DNA of 62,921 bases, counting the filler, from Dugesia japonica (Eukaryota), in NCBI GenBank assembly GCA_001938525.1. It is 6 parts of 6 records of this genome, joined end to end, with 100 filler letters (N's around TTAATTAATTAA, not from the genome) between each part and the next. Parts side by side here need not be neighbours in the genome. Positions count along the whole stretch, not along the records: positions 35,963 to 44,323 come from MQRL01608324.1; 5 more parts are not named here. The stretch is one strand, 5' to 3'. Below, piece by piece: positions 35,963 to 61,595 of the stretch. Below the pieces are notes generated by a model. The model did no database searches, was not told the DNA's origin, and was given only the letters and a program-made list of their open reading frames with translations. The number at the start of each line of letters is the position of its first letter. Positions within the stretch are counted from its first letter, which is position 1. The position numbers and the translations under genes are program-made.

Positions 35963-36493
35963 GAGAATAAATACTTATGGGGAATAACTGAGGTGTGTCA
36001 ACATATGTCAAATCTTTTGAAGTCTCAGGTGCAACTGGTTTATAAAATTGATAAGATAAATATCGAGAAAATTGTTAGCGAAATGCAAAAAAATGGTTAA
36101 GATGAAAACCGGTGTAAGTCCAAGGAAATATACTATCTCATGGAAAAGTATAACTATGATAATATAGATTATGGTATCCGAGAGGTGATGGAAAATTTTA
36201 ACTTGATAAAAACATTTATAACCATTTTATTAAATTTTAGGACTACAATTGAGAACTTATTAAAATTGAATTGACATAAAATGATTATTTTCAGGAGAAA
36301 TCGCTTTATTATTAGTTAGTTTGCAGGGGTGCTGATGACTCAAATTCAAGAGGAAAAATTGATTTAAATTGTAGCCCACCGTTTAAATTTCTTTTTTATA
36401 TTTAAACTCCTCCCACCACTTCTTCGAGGTAAATACTGGAGTTAATTAAATCTGAGACAAAATAGACTGGGGGGAATTGTTATAAATTAAAGC

Positions 36494-36667
36494 TTGAACC
36501 CAAATATAACGGTTTGTGGGCGTGCACCTCCCATTATGAGTGAGGTCAACCACCATGAACTGAATACCTACCCTAGGGACGGTAGGTTAAATTCTTGAAC
36601 GGGTTCCCCTGAGGGCTGTTTTTCCCCAGCCACGATATTTTTCTCTCGACTCAGGTGGGACCCCAAC
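36494..36667 (+). repeat. Dispersed structured motif, copy 1 (candidate cis-acting RNA)
   Basis: Homologous to 44063-44234(-) and 61425-61595(+); stems show compensatory changes. Confidence 0.85.
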
Positions 36668-38139
36668 AATATTAATAATAATAACGATGATAATACTAAA
36701 TGGTGATAATATTAGTAATAATAATAACAATAACAATAACATTGGCAAGAATCAACATTATTAGTAATGATAACAACCATTATGGTGAAATTAAAAAATG
36801 TTAAATTAAAGTTAAGATGTGATCGTCCCGAGAAACCTTATGGGTTATAAATATTCACTCACAACCATGATAACAGCCGGGTACCCTCGAAAGGTCCCTG
36901 TTATCGTTGGTAAAATAATAGGATAAAAACGGTAATCTTAATGACACGAATAATATTAGACGTTAATATGTAGTAGGAAGCTGATATAAAAGAAAAATAT
37001 CGGACAACAGCAATTCACCTGGTTATAAAAACCACCGTAATAATAGCGAATATCAATACTNNNNNNNNNNNNNNNNNNNNNNNNNNNNNNNNNNNNNNNN
37101 NNNNNNNNNNNNNNNNNNNNNNNNNNNNNNNNNNNNCACAACGAAATTTATAACATTCAACTGATGGAATTTATAGTACAAACACTAATCAAAACGATTT
37201 AATCGACGATAATTTTACTCATTTCAGGAATCACTAATTATATTTAATCATCATTATATTTACGTGTGTGGAGACATATTGAGTAATTACTGATAAACTG
37301 CCCCGTCGATGATTTGTAGATAGAGTTAACCGTACTATCTTTAATCTATACATATCTAATGCAGGCAAGCCCCTTGGAATAAAACAGTGTGTTACGATCT
37401 CATTCCGTTAGTCACAACATTATCTAGGTGACTAATAAAATTTTATTAGAATGAAAGGTCTCTGTTTCTCTACAATGATAATTCTGTCATCACCACAAGT
37501 GATTAGCTAAAACAACAAACACACACCGTTGTGATGGAGTTTCTGTATTCATCAGCTATAAGTTATATAAGTTAGCCTATAACTCAATTTCTAGCCATAT
37601 GACAAATAGCAATTCCGTATTTACTGGAACAGAAATTTCTTATGAAATCATCGATTCATCGTTATAATATCACTGGGAAATTGGATTCATAATTTACGTC
37701 ACAGAAATATCTTGGATTTTATTGCAAGGAGATCAGTTTATTTGCCGATTAATTTATCGATTTATATGAAAATTCTGTTTATGATAAAAATTAAAAGGTT
37801 AATGAGTGTAATTATTTATATAATGAAATACTTCTCATGATAAGAATGTATAAATAACAATGCTTACTATTTTCTTAGAACTGATTCTGAAAAAGGGATA
37901 AATCAATGAATTGCCAATTCGTTTTGACCGAAAATAGTGAGTAGATTTTTCCTTGTTTTCGAATATTGTTCTCAGCTAATAACTATATCGTGGAATCCCT
38001 CTTTTATTGTTTATTCAACTATATATGAAAATTTCCGTTAAATAAATACGATAATGCTTGAATCCAAATTAGATTTTTTATAGAAATAAGTCACGCTTTC
38101 TTAATAACACTTTTATACAAAATTAAATGGTAAAAGGCT

Positions 38140-38480
38140 TTAAGTTTTCGGGGGCCTTTTAGAGGATTTTCCCTGCACCCCTACTTTCTTTACATTGGAT
38201 ATTATTTTTAGTTTCTGGTTTGCCGCTTCTTATTGGCAGCAGATCTGAATTTTCTAAAATTTTTATGATTTCTAGCTTTTCGATTGGTGCCTATTTTTAG
38301 TACACCTTGTGATTTTTAGGCTTTATTCTTCGTATAATTTCTGGCCCCTCATTGCCCCATTCTTCAAAACATTTTCTAGACCTTTCTGATGATGGTAAAG
38401 CTTTCTTGTTGAAAAATCCAATTGCCCCGTAAGTTTTTCTCTTCAATTTTTCTTGTTTCCATATTCTGTAACCTTCCAGA
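38140..38480 (-). promoter_or_regulatory. Repeat-borne multi-CCAAT + TATA promoter module, copy 1
   Basis: ATTGG at ~38194, 38233 and 38283; shares attggtgcctatttttag.caccttgtga with the 55540-55800 copy. Confidence 0.6.
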
Positions 38481-40639
38481 GTGAAGATATACACCAAAAA
38501 CAGACTTTTCTTAATTTAATTCTTTTTCAAAACAAAATTAATTAATTTTTTCTCATATTTTCTTATTTTTATTAATACATATTTTCTCGTTTTTATATGA
38601 GAAAATATAATTTTTTTAATTAATTTTATTACCTCTTTATTAAGTTGTGACAGCGTATTCATCCGTTTAATACTTTAACGATTTCAGCTATTTCCCATTA
38701 TTTAATATTAATTTATCTTTGACATGTACTTTCTATTAATCAATATGTTTCGAATAGTTTTTCCTTTCCTCTTTTTGCCTATGTTTGAAACCCTTTTAAG
38801 TTATTATTTTCATGATCGGGTTTTTCACCCCAACAATAGTTACACGACAAAAAAGCTACTGTGTTGGCAAACATCTGTAATCTTTGGCAAGAGCACTAGA
38901 AGAATCCGTAATTCTGAATGAAATTTGAATAAATGTATACTGGAACATTTGTCGTTCGTAATCGAAGAGTCAGTGATTTGATCAAATAGCATCAAAATGA
39001 TTTTTCCAAAGACGATTTACCACAAGGACCTAGGATAGATGATAACAGTTTAGGAGAACACTATCAAATTTCTAAGGGCATCGGGGTATCTACCCCTAGA
39101 ATAGAAAAAAAGAATTACTGGAAATCAAGCTAAATGAATGTGGTACTATGGAGAAAGAAGATTAACACAACCCTGAAGCCCAATAAATCTCTTAAAATTA
39201 TTATCTATTATTTATTTATCACTTTTATTTAGCATTGTTGACTTTAAAAAGTTGACATTTTAAAATCTAATCTAATTATCAAATTAAAATTATTCAATAA
39301 TAATAAATCACTTGAAATATTTATTTATTATGTTGAGATGATTTTGGGATTATTGGAAACCCAAATCAATTTGAGAAAATTCTTTAAAGATTATAAAATA
39401 ATTCAGGTATTGATAAATTTATTGGTCTTAATGTCGTTAATATATCAAATAATATGAATGTACATAAACTATATAGTCTGCTATTAAATAAAATTCACAA
39501 AATTTACTTTTAAAATGTTTATAATTGTATCAAATTTTTACAATAGAAATTCAGGCGTTACTATTTTGATTGCTAGTCGTTTTTTTGCAATTTGAAAGAG
39601 GGTAATAATTCTAATTTCACTTCGTTTTTTATACTAGCGATTTACATGTGACCTTAATAGAATTCACCTAATTTTTTTTTGTAAAAGCATGTTGAAAATT
39701 TAAAAAATCTAATAAAAATAAAAATTTACATTTGGAAAATTAAAACCATAAATATTTTTTCAAAAATTAGTATTATCATAAAAATATTTACCATAATTAG
39801 ATTTATTTATAAATTCTAATAATCGAATCGAATCTGCAAATCATTAATAATTACATTAATATAATAACAGTTTGGAAATTGAAGTGCTAATTTGCATTCG
39901 AATCTAATAATGATTAAAAATTACATTTAAAATCAAATAATTACATAATCAGTTTGGAAAATAAAGTACTAATTTACATAACTAAAGACATAAAAAGTGA
40001 TGGGGATCACAAAGTGAATAAATCAATTAGTAAAAATATCGGACTACCTGGATCTTCTGATTTATTGAACTTGATATTGTTTTCTGTTTTGATGTGTATG
40101 TTGTGGGATTATGTTTGATGTTATTCATTATGGGATCGCATGCTTGTGTATTAGGTGTTATTTTCCCCAAAAATTATTTATTTATCGCTATAATTTATCG
40201 TTTTTGACTTAAAAATGAGAATCACCTGTCCCGGGGAATTAGCTGTCCAAGTAATCAAATGTCGGAGTATCAAAAGTCACATCACCATTTTTAATATTAA
40301 ATTTTATCAAATTTCAAATTTTACTAAATTCGAAATTTAATTATGTTCAACAAAATATTCTTTGCAATTCATAAATTTTTATTAATGTTGTTGGGCTTCT
40401 AGGTTTTTGGTGTTATTTATCTATTCACTTTTATTTCTTTCTCGAGTATCTTTGCTATGGGTAGTTACTCAGAAACCGGCAGAAATTTGGTCAACACCGT
40501 CAGTGTTGAGACCATCTACCCCGGATTTCAGACGAGACTTTGCGGTATTCCGTCATTTAAAAAGTCTTGAATGTTAACGCTCATAATTAATTTGTGTATT
40601 TAGAGAACAAAGAGAAACTCTTGAAATATAAATTTATTC

Positions 40640-42514
40640 ATGGCGAACCGAAAATCGTTTCTTCTGTAATGATGCAGCTAGGTTCGATAATATATTTCCC
40701 TTCATACTCGTGTCACAACACAACACATAAGAAATTTATGTCCATTGTGCTGCCCAGAGCTTGAATTTAGCAATTTCAAATGCCTGTGAAGTTCAATCTG
40801 TTCGAAATTGCATGAGCACAGTTGGAATATTGTACAACGTCTTTAATACTCTAAAAAGGCAACTTGTTTTATCATCTGCCATATCACAGATATGCCCGAA
40901 ATCCCATATAACAAAATTGACGCAGATGTGTGCAACATGATGGGTAGAAAGGTACAACTCTGTATCTGCATTCTTGGAAATTCAAGATGCTGTTTTTTCT
41001 GCCTCGGATGATATAAAAGAGTGGACTGATAGAGATTCGTCATCACAAGCCACGCAGCTTCTCTGAACCATTAAGCAAACAGATTTCAACACTGCTCTGC
41101 ATCGCACAGCTCAAGTGCTTAACTATAGAAAACAATTGTGTAAAGAACTTCAAAAGATAGACCTTGATCTTGTAGAAGATATCATGGCAGAGGTGCAACG
41201 ATTGAGAATAGAAGCAGATTCTGAATTTAAGAAGTTGTATGGTGCTGTATCTGAAGTTGCAGAAAAACATGATTTTTCATTAAAGCAACCAAGAATAACT
41301 AGCCAACAAACTAAACGATGTAGCATTTCAATTACATCTGATGAAGAATATTACAAGATTGCAATTTACATTACATTCTTGGACTCGTTCATAAGTCAAC
41401 TTCAATCGAGATTCTCGAATCACAAGAGAATTCTTCGAGGTTTTCAGTGTCTTCCTAAAGATCTGAATAATTCACCATCTTGCAAACAGTTGGAGGACAT
41501 TAAGCATCTTATTGATTTTTATTTTGAAGATCTAGATTGCGATGTAGATTCGGCTATTACAGAAATGAAACTATGGTATCGTCGTCTGTCACGTGTGAGC
41601 CGAAATGGATTTCCAAGAAATGCTCTAGAGGCTCTAGCAGTCTGTAATGTTACATTGCAAGCAAATATCAGAAAGCTTCTGCAAATATTAGCCACACTAC
41701 CAGTATCGACATGTACCAGTCAGCGTTCATTTTTAACTCTCCCACGTTTGAAAACGTATCTACGAAACACTACTAGCGAAACACGACTCAATGTACTGGC
41801 CCTTTTTAAATATCCATCGCGAACATACCCCAACTACCGATGAAATAATCAATGAATTTATCAAACAGAAAGGGCGTTTGGACTTTACATTATGGCCTAA
41901 AATGATATAACTGTTGCTGGTTGATGACTGTGGTTTACTTGAAAGTTGAACTTAAAAGTATTTAATAAATAAATTTGAAGATTTTAATTAATTTGGAATC
42001 TGCCTATTTGTTTGTAAAATACCTGTATTTTAGACATCAGATGTTTTTATACTTTCTTATACATTTTAAGTTTTGCGCTATCATAAAACTATACATTGTT
42101 TTCACTGTGTAGGATATCCAGTTCCTCGAAATAGGGTTGCTTAGGAATAGCGTCGGCGTAAAACTTTGCTTCGCATTCCCTAGTATAGCTGATTGACCGT
42201 TCAGCTTTCCAAGCCAAGTATATGGTTGTTTAAAAAGTTGTAGTTAAAGATTTAATTGGCTATCTGTCTTGCTGTTGGGGAGCAGCCGACCACCCAAGCT
42301 TGCTTGGACGTTTGTCAGATGGTCGCAAAAAGGCGATGATGATGAATAGGTACAGTGTCATAATATCAGTAAAATAATAATTATAAAATTTTGCAGACCC
42401 CCTAATCGCGTGCGCTCACACCTTTGACGTCTTTGTTGTTTTATAATGTAAGTAAAAACAAAAATTTTGACAAAAATTTAAACCCCCCTTCATATATTCC
42501 CGGCTACACAACTG
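40640..42514 (+). mobile_element. hAT transposon 3' part (PRKRIR/ZMYM1-like transposase)
   Basis: HCAAQSLNLAIS, CAT*WVER, LDSFISQLQSRF, and the hAT-C dimerisation motif LATLPVSTCTSQRSF..L.RLKTYLRNTTSETRLN. Candidate end ...ggctacacaactg. Confidence 0.88.
42112..42345 (+). mobile_element. Possible SINE / RTE-derived insertion with a (GAT)n tail inside the hAT 3' region
   Basis: GC-richer island ending ...aaaaaggcgatgatgatga, with an internal hairpin cgacca...ccaagc-ttgcttgg...tggtcg. Confidence 0.4.
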
Positions 42515-44062
42515 GTGGCAACAATACAATTAAAATATTCAATCTGTTTTTCCCCTTATCCCGAATTTTTTTTTCAAAGTTAACCATATTCGAGTTTTAA
42601 CGAAAAAATTATAATTTTTCCTAATTGTTCTTTTCTATCAATATTTCATTTTGATATACTTATATAAAGATAATTTTTATGCGGGCGACCATTTTGTTAG
42701 ATATAAATGTCCCAAAATTAAAATAATTTGTATAATTGAAGAAATTTGTGATATGCCTTTTAGTTGTATTATAGTTTCTTTTTTTGTAAAAATTAAATTT
42801 CAATCATTTTCAATTTATAATTTTGTCTATAAAATGTATTCATTGTTTATTTTAATATTTTGTATAACTGAACCATTATTTTCCTTTAAACACTACACAA
42901 ATTAAATAATTATTTTATTAAATATAATAAAAATTCCAGTATTGATCAAAATAAAGTTTACATTAATAATAAATTATAAGTCTTTTTGATAACTCAAAAG
43001 CTCTGAAATATTTACTGTCTAAAATCTACTAAAACTTTTCATACTTTGGTCATTGAATTATACTCCATTTTGTAAAACTTTATGGTAATTTTTTGTTTAG
43101 ACAATTCACAATAATTTCAGCATGAAAAGCTCTGAAACGGAAAATCTTAAATCGCATTTACAGCTCATAATATTACCAAAAATTAATAATAAAAATTCTT
43201 ATTTTTATGTTTGCTTAATTGCTAATGCGAAACTTGACCATAATTGTTTTAATGATTCTGGTCCTACTTATTCCATTAAGAAAATTGAATTATAACGAAT
43301 ATTCTGAAAATTTTAAAAGTAATGCTGTTATAAGCTAAAATAAGAAATATTTTAAATATTAATTTTAATATTAAGTTATTCTTAAAGTCATTAAAAATTC
43401 AGTGCAATATCGAAACAGCATTCAATGATTTCATTGACTCCGCAAATTGCGATTTTATTTAAATGGGAAACAATAAACTTCGTCACGATGGCAAAAATGC
43501 ATATATTCCGGTGGTGCTTAGTTTAATAAAATTTTTGTAATGGACTTAGTTATTACAGTTTAAAGTTTGGCTTCAAAAGCCGCAATTACTTTTATAATGT
43601 TCGACTGGGTCGACTATTTAAGAGTTGTGGGTTTTGAGGAATTTCTTGTGCGTTTTCGTTCATCTCTGTATAGATCCAATAAATGCATGTTTAATATATT
43701 TTCCATATTCGGTAATGAAAATTACTATCACTTTTCATGCTAAGATGGTATTACTCCGTGTGGTAAATGGATTTCTTGACGCTATTAATTGGTATAGTGA
43801 CATTAAGGTTAGATACTCTAATTTATGATGCGAGGGAGCATGTTAATTAAGTATGACTCTTATTGCGGTAACTTTATTCTAAATTTCAACTCCATAGTTG
43901 ATCAGAAAAAGCAACTGTAAAATTGTTATCGAGCTCATGTTTGGAACAACAATAAAATGGACTCGTGATATTAATTCTAATCTTGCCGATAATAATTACA
44001 GTAACCATGCATACAAAATTTTAGAACGACACAGTCATAATCATTTGTTCAGTGTTACAAGT

Positions 44063-44234
44063 GTTGGGGTTCCACCGGAGTTGGGAAAAATTGTGACTGG
44101 GGAAAAAACAGTCCTCAGGGGAACCCTTTCAAGAATTTAATACCCTACCGTCCCTATGGTAGGTTTTCAGTTTATCGTGGTTGACCTTACCCTTGATGGA
44201 AGGTGCTTGCCAATAAACCTTTGGTTCGGGTTCT
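44063..44234 (-). repeat. Dispersed structured motif, copy 2
   Basis: Its reverse complement aligns with 36494-36667. Confidence 0.85.
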
Positions 44235-44323
44235 CTATTTTCCCAGTACCGTTTAGACAACTTAAACCAATTTTATTAATTAACTTTCTTTTATTTATAC
44301 GGGAAATTAAGTCAGTTTTATTA

Positions 44324-61424: not shown

Positions 61425-61595
61425 TTGAACCTAAACCAAAGGTATACGTGTGTGCACCTCAAATAAGTGGTGGAGGTCAACCGCTCTATACCGAGAATCT
61501 AAATAGAGACATTAGATTAAATTCTTCAACGGATCCCCTGATGGCTGCTTTTTCCCACAGCCATATTCTACCACAAATTCAGGTGGGACCCCACC
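61425..61595 (+). repeat. Dispersed structured motif, copy 3
   Basis: Most diverged copy; its stems are kept by compensatory changes. Confidence 0.8.

What the first reader, a model, noticed from the sequence alone, without database searches (positions are those of the whole stretch)
36494..36667. Undescribed ~170-nt structured motif in three dispersed copies, with compensatory base-pair changes
Seen: copies at 36494-36667(+), 44063-44234(-) and 61425-61595(+) diverge in sequence but keep the same stems. P1: GGTTTGT/ATGAACT, GGTTTAT/ATAAACT, GGTATA/TATACC. P2: ACCTC/GAGGT vs ACCTT/AAGGT. P3: ACCTACC/GGTAGGT vs AATCTAA/TTAGATT around a conserved TAGRGAC loop. P4: GGGTTCC paired with GGGACCC or GGAACCC, plus CTGAG/CTCAG. 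P5: GGCTG/CAGCC vs GACTG/CAGTC around a pyrimidine loop. Inference: covariation and G-U pairs suggest selection on an RNA fold, such as a retroelement packaging/dimerisation/export signal, an IRES-like element or a new ribozyme. I do not recognise a hammerhead, twister, pistol or HDV core in it.
Basis: partly seen in the sequence, partly recalled or inferred. Interest (0 to 1): 0.78.

Follow-up and report, generated by a model that had tools for sequence, protein, structure and literature searches.

The report
Short structured interspersed repeat, two copies
Two diverged copies of a roughly 172-base non-coding repeat in an AT-rich, probably arthropod, genome keep the same three RNA hairpins, which most likely marks an ordinary short retroposon family; no evidence points to a new ribozyme.

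Summary
The piece holds two of the three claimed copies: A at 36496-36668 (+) and B at 44062-44233 (-). They are 84.5% identical without gaps, and their flanks are unrelated. The third copy lies outside the piece and could not be checked.

RNAalifold gives 38 pairs in five helices forming three hairpin domains. Three pairs changed on both sides and stayed paired, three changed between G-U and A-U, and none broke. In my own null, the same 27 substitutions were re-placed at random. The observed alignment-fold energy was -47.75 kcal/mol against about -27 to -30 (sd 4.2), reached by 0 of 1000 trials. The sense strand carries the stronger signal.

No Rfam family, tRNA, ribozyme core or A/B box matches.

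Copy A is followed directly by about 24 degenerate AAT units and has a candidate 10-bp target duplication. Copy B has neither. Both copies carry two T5-T6 runs on the sense strand.

Best reading (about 0.5): a SINE-like non-autonomous retroposon whose RNA fold is kept for recognition by a partner element's reverse transcriptase. No eukaryotic genome or repeat library was available, so only two copies could be compared and membership stays open.

The parts
36496..36668 (+). Repeat copy A, body (173 nt)
   Evidence: Aligned to copy B over its whole length. Flanks are unrelated. Covariance model score 212 bits.
36511..36561 (+). Copy A, hairpin domain 1: P1 (36511-36519 with 36553-36561), internal loop, P2 (36526-36531 with 36540-36546)
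   Evidence: Minimum-free-energy fold and RNAalifold. P1 has one two-sided and two one-sided changes against copy B. P2 has one two-sided change.
36567..36586 (+). Copy A, hairpin domain 2: P3 (36567-36572 with 36581-36586), 8-nt loop
   Evidence: The stem is invariant between the two copies, so it says nothing for or against the fold.
36601..36663 (+). Copy A, hairpin domain 3: P4 (36601-36613 with 36650-36663) and P5 (36614-36618 with 36627-36631) around a pyrimidine loop
   Evidence: P5 has one two-sided change and P4 one one-sided change. This domain contains both T5 runs.
36668..36739 (+). Degenerate (AAT)n tail directly after copy A; AT-rich sequence continues to about 36801
   Evidence: Tandem Repeats Finder: period 3, 23.7 copies, 70% matches. 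It is the only period-3 array in the piece.
36483..36492 (+). Candidate target-site duplication, upstream copy (10 nt)
   Evidence: The same 10-nt word recurs at 36802-36811. 74 of 2000 shuffles reach it. Weak evidence.
36802..36811 (+). Candidate target-site duplication, downstream copy (10 nt)
44062..44233 (-). Repeat copy B, body (172 nt), inverted relative to A. It has no repeat tail and no target duplication.
   Evidence: Covariance model score 215 bits.
44169..44219 (-). Copy B, hairpin domain 1 (P1 and P2)
44144..44163 (-). Copy B, hairpin domain 2 (P3)
   Evidence: In copy B's own minimum-free-energy fold this hairpin is replaced by a weaker alternative.
44067..44126 (-). Copy B, hairpin domain 3 (P4 and P5)

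Best explanation
The unit is a short, non-coding interspersed repeat. It is most likely a SINE-like non-autonomous retroposon of an AT-rich, probably arthropod, genome.

Its sense-strand RNA folds into three hairpin domains. The two copies descend from source elements that diverged while selection kept those hairpins. I infer that the fold, together with an AAT/TAA-type repeat tail, is what the reverse transcriptase of a partner non-LTR retrotransposon recognises and primes on. This is the pattern seen in 'stringent-type' LINE/SINE pairs.

Shown here:
- a repeat with unrelated flanks;
- a shared fold with pair-preserving substitutions;
- a tail after copy A.

Inferred, not shown:
- an RNA intermediate;
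- a partner element;
- the role of the hairpins;
- how the unit is transcribed, probably not by RNA polymerase III reading through the sense strand.
For: The two copies lie in opposite orientation 7.4 kb apart, and their flanks are unrelated.

The unit has no coding constraint. The pseudo-peptides are only 60-64% identical and are interrupted by a stop.

The fold is shared. There are 38 pairs with 3 two-sided and 3 one-sided changes and none broken. The pattern is far from random placement and stronger on the sense strand. Indels and most differences lie in unpaired columns.

A degenerate (AAT) array of about 24 units starts at the last base of copy A. A 10-nt word is repeated on either side of body plus tail.

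From the literature: stem-loops with compensatory changes are usual in the 3' ends of stringent-type LINEs and SINEs, the I element ends in TAA repeats (PMC3747384), and a LINE ORF2 protein binds its cognate 3' stem-loop (PMC4176376).
Against: There are only two copies, so there is no proper covariation statistic. The shared 5' boundary could simply be where the shorter copy ends.

There is no tRNA, 5S or 7SL similarity. No A/B box is conserved at the same place in both copies.

Both copies carry two T5-T6 runs on the sense strand, one of them inside the P5 loop. These would stop RNA polymerase III.

Copy B has no tail and no target duplication. Its fold is no more stable than shuffles (z -0.64).

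No partner LINE is in the piece. No further copy was found in any collection I could search.
Confidence: 0.5

Rival explanations
1. The unit is a small multi-copy gene family for a structured non-coding RNA of an undescribed class, or retropseudogenes of such an RNA. The fold is kept because the RNA itself works in the cell.
For: The substitutions preserve the fold and the signal is sense-specific. Copy B has no insertion hallmarks. A shared 10-nt word lies 52-56 nt upstream of both copies in otherwise unrelated flanks, reached by 0.7% of shuffles in a post hoc test.
Against: There is no Rfam match of any kind. Copy A has an AAT tail. The internal T-runs do not suit a polymerase III gene. Copy B's stability is weak. 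The reported third copy is much more diverged in its stems, which is usual for repeats and less so for genes; this was not checkable.
Confidence: 0.12
2. The pair-preserving pattern does not come from selection on an RNA. It would be chance plus mutational processes in DNA hairpins, namely template switching during replication, acting on an ordinary decaying repeat.
For: Only three two-sided changes carry the argument, and the tool's own control cannot separate them from chance (67/500). Template switching is documented to create and maintain apparently compensatory changes in hairpins (PMC8794818). The antisense alignment also folds better than its null (P 0.01-0.02).
Against: The three compensations are single pairs in three different helices. 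No stem pair of the consensus fold is broken, whereas random placement on a structure from one copy alone breaks about 8-12 pairs against 3-8 observed. Five pairs work only on the sense strand through G-U.
Confidence: 0.15
3. The unit is a solo long terminal repeat, or the terminal repeat of a miniature LTR element (TRIM).
For: Copy A reads TG...CA if one more base is counted at its 5' end. The size is within the range of TRIM terminal repeats (from my own knowledge).
Against: Copy B starts AG rather than TG. Neither copy has a 4-6 bp flanking duplication. The two copies are inverted, not direct. Nothing retroviral-like lies between them; only a hAT remnant does. An AAT tail is not an LTR feature.
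Confidence: 0.07
4. Copies A and B are the terminal inverted repeats of one 7.7-kb DNA transposon that carries the hAT transposase remnant.
For: The orientation is inverted, with the hAT remnant in between.
Against: The 8 bases outside the two outer ends do not match, so there is no 8-bp duplication. The interior flanks are unrelated. A 90.7% identical hAT copy on another contig has no such repeat next to it. The unit has no terminal inverted repeat of its own.
Confidence: 0.05
5. The unit is a self-cleaving ribozyme-bearing repeat, like retrozyme or Penelope-type hammerhead repeats, or carries a new catalytic fold.
For: The size and the structured, dispersed nature resemble known ribozyme-bearing repeats. 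A seven-base word fitting the first half of the hammerhead core occurs in copy B only.
Against: No hammerhead, twister, twister-sister, pistol, hatchet, hairpin or HDV-type match appears at E up to 10 on 231-base stretches. The second half of the hammerhead core is absent in both copies. The copies are not tandem.
Confidence: 0.03

Closest known systems
3' tails of stringent-type LINE/SINE pairs (eel UnaL2/UnaSINE1, zebrafish ZfL2; PMC4176376, PMC3747384)
   Same: A stem-loop RNA is followed by short tandem repeats. Stems are kept through compensatory changes while loops and linkers are partly conserved. The sequence is non-coding and dispersed.
   Different: No partner LINE is seen here. The fold spans the whole 172-nt unit in three hairpins, rather than one terminal stem-loop. 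Only one of the two copies has the repeat tail.
Drosophila I factor and I-clade non-LTR retrotransposons (TAA-repeat 3' ends; cited in PMC3747384)
   Same: The trinucleotide 3' tail has the same repeat unit (AAT = TAA).
   Different: Those are autonomous elements several kilobases long with open reading frames. Here there is no reverse transcriptase coding sequence upstream of either copy.
tRNA-derived insect SINEs (e.g. the lepidopteran SINEs of PMC8010984)
   Same: Length class, dispersion in both orientations, simple-repeat tail.
   Different: No tRNA-like head and no A/B boxes. The body carries T5-T6 runs.
Hammerhead-bearing SINE-like repeats and retrozymes of metazoans
   Same: Short, structured, repeated non-coding units.
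   Different: No ribozyme core was detected. The copies are not in tandem.

Membership tests
SINE (non-autonomous non-LTR retroposon) | Short dispersed unit with its own fixed 5' and 3' ends and unrelated flanks | tested here: met
   The two copies share both ends, and their flanks fall within shuffles. With two copies, the 5' end is only as sure as the shorter copy.
SINE (non-autonomous non-LTR retroposon) | Head derived from tRNA, 5S or 7SL RNA with an internal polymerase III promoter (A and B boxes) | tested here: not met
   ARAGORN finds none. Rfam finds nothing at E up to 10. Box-like words occur at chance level and not at matching positions. The sense strand has T5-T6 runs.
SINE (non-autonomous non-LTR retroposon) | A-rich or simple-repeat 3' tail | tested here: inconclusive
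   Copy A has an (AAT) array of about 24 units starting at its last base. Copy B has none.
SINE (non-autonomous non-LTR retroposon) | Target-site duplications | tested here: inconclusive
   Copy A has a 10-nt word on both sides, P about 0.04. Copy B has none of 7 nt or more.
SINE (non-autonomous non-LTR retroposon) | 3' part shared with a partner LINE of the same genome | not testable with these tools
   No eukaryotic genome or repeat library is on hand, and there is no LINE in the piece.
Rfam families, including self-cleaving ribozymes (hammerhead, twister, twister-sister, pistol, hatchet, hairpin, HDV-like) | Covariance-model match at or near the family's gathering score | tested here: not met
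   The best matches on either copy score 8-17 bits with E 0.8-9. They are to unrelated families, and none is a ribozyme.
LTR / TRIM terminal repeat | TG...CA ends, 4-6 bp flanking duplication, direct pairing with a second repeat | tested here: not met
   Only copy A fits TG...CA. There are no flanking duplications, and the copies are inverted.
hAT or other DNA transposon (terminal inverted repeats) | Inverted ends flanked by a duplication (8 bp for hAT); or inverted ends within the unit (MITE) | tested here: not met
   The outer flanks do not match. The unit's own ends are not inverted copies of each other. The similarity of the upstream flank to the antisense 3' domain is not significant.
Structured RNA under selection (covariation standard) | Statistically significant covarying pairs across many independent sequences | tested here: inconclusive
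   Only two sequences are available. My placement null is strongly exceeded, but the tool's shuffle control is not (67/500). R-scape needs many more copies.

The most novel reading that the evidence does not exclude
The unit is an undescribed class of structured non-coding RNA whose fold is under selection in its own right. It would be either a cellular RNA gene family with an upstream control word, or a retroposon built on such an RNA, possibly with catalytic or protein-scaffolding activity.
Probability: 0.1. Interest if true: 0.65.

Novelty: new member of a known kind. Interest (0 to 1): 0.3.

Why it matters
If the reading is right, this is one more short retroposon family whose RNA fold is visible from its copies. 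That is useful for repeat annotation of this genome. It also offers a candidate recognition structure for an I-clade-like retrotransposon.

It is somewhat unusual in lacking any polymerase III head and in carrying T-runs. That raises the modest question of how such a unit is transcribed.

It also shows how far two copies can and cannot carry a covariation claim.

Tried and rejected
**Searches for more copies (all negative)**
- A protein word search with a pseudo-open-reading-frame of copy B found nothing.
- An exact DNA pattern in the metagenome and viral collections found nothing.
- Back-translated peptide patterns in the metagenome and viral collections found nothing.
- A pattern in the bacterial/archaeal genome collection gave one match in a Clostridiaceae MAG. 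It covers only the 22-26 bases of the pattern.
- Three more viral scans gave one match, which the model does not support.
- A profile search of 1.84 billion proteins with the pseudo-peptide returned only a bacterial repeat protein, by chance likeness.
- Contigs carrying relatives of the neighbouring hAT gene hold no copy of the repeat (L001, L003-L005).
- A full-text search for four motif words returned only primer matches to the shortest one.

**Attempts to name the organism**
- The best named hAT relatives are from an aphid and beetles, at 37-52% identity.
- The sample accession numbers are in no paper.
- A 45-residue reading frame cut by the left edge has only a sub-threshold Pfam HMA hit and no homologue.

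**Ideas rejected**
- H/ACA snoRNA: there is an ACA near the 3' end, but I saw no H box by eye in either hinge.
- Box C/D snoRNA: only a 10-bit Rfam chance hit.
- A 5' extension forming an inverted copy of the 3' domain: the duplex energy is notable for copy A only (P 0.01, against 0.49 for copy B), and the sequence similarity is not significant.
- An alternative closing helix between the first six bases of the unit and the 5' strand of P4: it is possible in both copies but invariant, so it cannot be tested.

To search, I built an nhmmer profile in /scratch and the covariance model R1 from the two natural copies. nhmmer printed its own consensus line, and I used that line for nothing. I did not touch the N run at 37062-37136.

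Full report
**What is there**

The piece (35963-44323) has about 29% G+C and is mostly non-coding. It holds two copies of a repeat in opposite orientation. Copy A is at 36496-36668 (+) and copy B at 44062-44233 (-). Over the body they differ by 26 substitutions and 9 gap columns, which is 84.5% ungapped identity.

Local and global alignments of the upstream and downstream flanks score no better than shuffles. So the unit is about 172 nt and is not part of a longer duplicated block. nhmmer, blastn and a covariance model with filters off found no third copy in the piece. The best other match, 38785-38835, scores 8.3 bits at E 0.16.

**The fold**

Copy B keeps domains 1 and 3 in its own minimum-free-energy fold, but overall it is no more stable than shuffles (z -0.64).

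RNAalifold on the pair gives 38 pairs in five helices:
- 32 pairs are unchanged.
- 3 changed on one side, all between G-U and A-U.
- 3 changed on both sides and stayed paired, one each in P1, P2 and P5.
- None is broken.

One pair of copy A's own fold, next to P4, is a U-C mismatch in copy B and is left out of the consensus. All nine gap columns of the body and 17 of its 26 substitutions lie in unpaired columns.

**Is it more than chance?**

The tool's own shuffle control has no power with two rows (67/500). So I kept one copy fixed and re-placed the observed substitutions at random on the same base types, 1000 times in each direction.

| Measure | Observed | Null |
|---|---|---|
| Two-sided compensations, on a structure predicted from the fixed copy alone | 3 | mean 0.4-0.5 (P 0.004-0.005) |
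| Broken pairs, A fixed | 8 | 11.6 (P 0.06) |
| Broken pairs, B fixed | 3 | 7.9 (P 0.001) |
| RNAalifold energy (kcal/mol) | -47.75 | -27.3 and -30.0, sd 4.2 (0/1000) |

The antisense alignment is also better than its null, but less so: -43.6 against about -35, sd 3.7 (P 0.01-0.02). Five pairs of the sense structure fail when mirrored, because they are G-U.

This is still not covariation in the R-scape sense. Three two-sided changes carry the argument, and template switching in DNA hairpins can mimic compensation (PMC8794818).

**What it is not**

- Rfam 15 gives only chance-level hits to unrelated families. This holds for the whole piece and for each copy alone with permissive filters. There is no tRNA, 5S, 7SL or snRNA match, and no hammerhead, twister, twister-sister, pistol, hatchet, hairpin or HDV-like match.
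- ARAGORN finds no tRNA.
- A-box and B-box words occur at chance frequency and not at matching places in the two copies.
- Both copies carry two T5-T6 runs on the sense strand, one in the P5 loop. This argues against polymerase III reading through the unit. The antisense strand has no such run.
- The unit does not code. The longest shared frame has a stop, and its peptides are only 60-64% identical at 84.5% ungapped DNA identity.

**Signs of how it spread**

A degenerate (AAT)n array starts at the last base of copy A. It has 23.7 units at 70% matches and is the only period-3 array in the piece. A 10-nt word lies just before the body (36483-36492) and again after the tail (36802-36811), a coincidence reached by 3.7% of shuffles. 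Copy B has neither a tail nor a duplication.

There is no reverse transcriptase or other retroelement coding sequence next to either copy.

The inverted pair is not the two ends of one DNA transposon. The outer flanks carry no duplication and the inner flanks are unrelated. A 90.7% identical copy of the hAT remnant lying between them sits on another contig without the repeat.

**Best explanation and rivals**

I commit, at about 0.5, to a SINE-like non-autonomous retroposon. Its RNA fold was kept by selection in the active lineages, most likely as the recognition structure for the reverse transcriptase of a partner non-LTR element with TAA-type tails.

This is a known kind of arrangement. Stem-loops with compensatory changes are usual in stringent-type LINE and SINE 3' ends, and I-clade elements end in TAA repeats (PMC3747384). 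[quoted passage not shown]

The membership test is mixed. Dispersion and discrete ends are met. Tail and duplications are met in one copy only. A polymerase III head was tested and not met. A partner LINE could not be tested. So I say it works like a SINE or LINE-tail element, without filing it as a classical SINE.

| Rival | Confidence |
|---|---|
| Mutational or chance origin of the pattern | 0.15 |
| Structured RNA gene family | 0.12 |
| Solo LTR / TRIM repeat | 0.07 |
| Inverted ends of one DNA element | 0.05 |
| Ribozyme-bearing repeat | 0.03 |

**Limits**

No eukaryotic genome collection or repeat library was available. Every route to more copies came back empty. The organism could not be named. 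The neighbouring hAT remnant's best named relatives are from an aphid and beetles, at 37-52% identity.

'Undescribed' therefore means only 'not in Rfam 15'.

**Verdict**

Interest 0.3. Novelty: new member of a known kind, which would become 'already known' if a repeat library holds it.

Noticed in passing
window 40734-41892 (+): This is a remnant of a hAT-family transposase gene, C-terminal part with the hAT dimerisation domain (Pfam PF05699, E 8.6e-07). It is broken: 2 in-frame stops and at least 1 change of frame, and the N-terminal part is missing. The longest intact stretch is the 242-residue frame at 41115-41843. The best named relatives are '52 kDa repressor of the inhibitor of the protein kinase-like' proteins of an aphid and beetles.
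   Followed up: partly
L001:340-909 versus window 41351-41927: An ENA metagenome contig (ERZ27284375, 1445 nt) carries a hAT copy 90.7% identical in DNA over 580 nt. So the same or a closely related species occurs as a minor component of that sample.
   Followed up: partly
window 36440-36449 (+) and 44276-44285 (-): The same 10-nt word lies 56 and 52 nt upstream of the two repeat bodies, in flanks that are otherwise unrelated. It is reached by 0.7% of shuffles in a post hoc test. It could be chance, a target preference or an upstream control element.
   Followed up: partly
window 38785-38835 (+): This is the best sub-threshold covariance-model match (8.3 bits, E 0.16). It begins like the 5' end of the unit and ends with the same 12-nt word as the 3' end of copy A. 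It may be an internally deleted copy or chance.
   Followed up: partly
window 35963-36097 (+): A 45-codon open frame is cut by the left edge of the piece and ends about 400 nt before copy A. It has a sub-threshold Pfam hit to the heavy-metal-associated domain (18.9 bits, cut-off 24.8) and no homologue of similar length. It may be the last exon of a host gene.
   Followed up: partly
window 36410-36495 (+): The 86 nt upstream of copy A can form an extended duplex with the 3' half of the body (-47.6 kcal/mol, P 0.01). Copy B shows no such duplex (P 0.49), and the sequence similarity to the antisense body is not significant.
   Followed up: yes
window 39842-39979 (+): Two copies of a 56-nt AT-rich unit, 75% alike, lie 82 nt apart, with further short repeats around them. 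Not examined.
   Followed up: no
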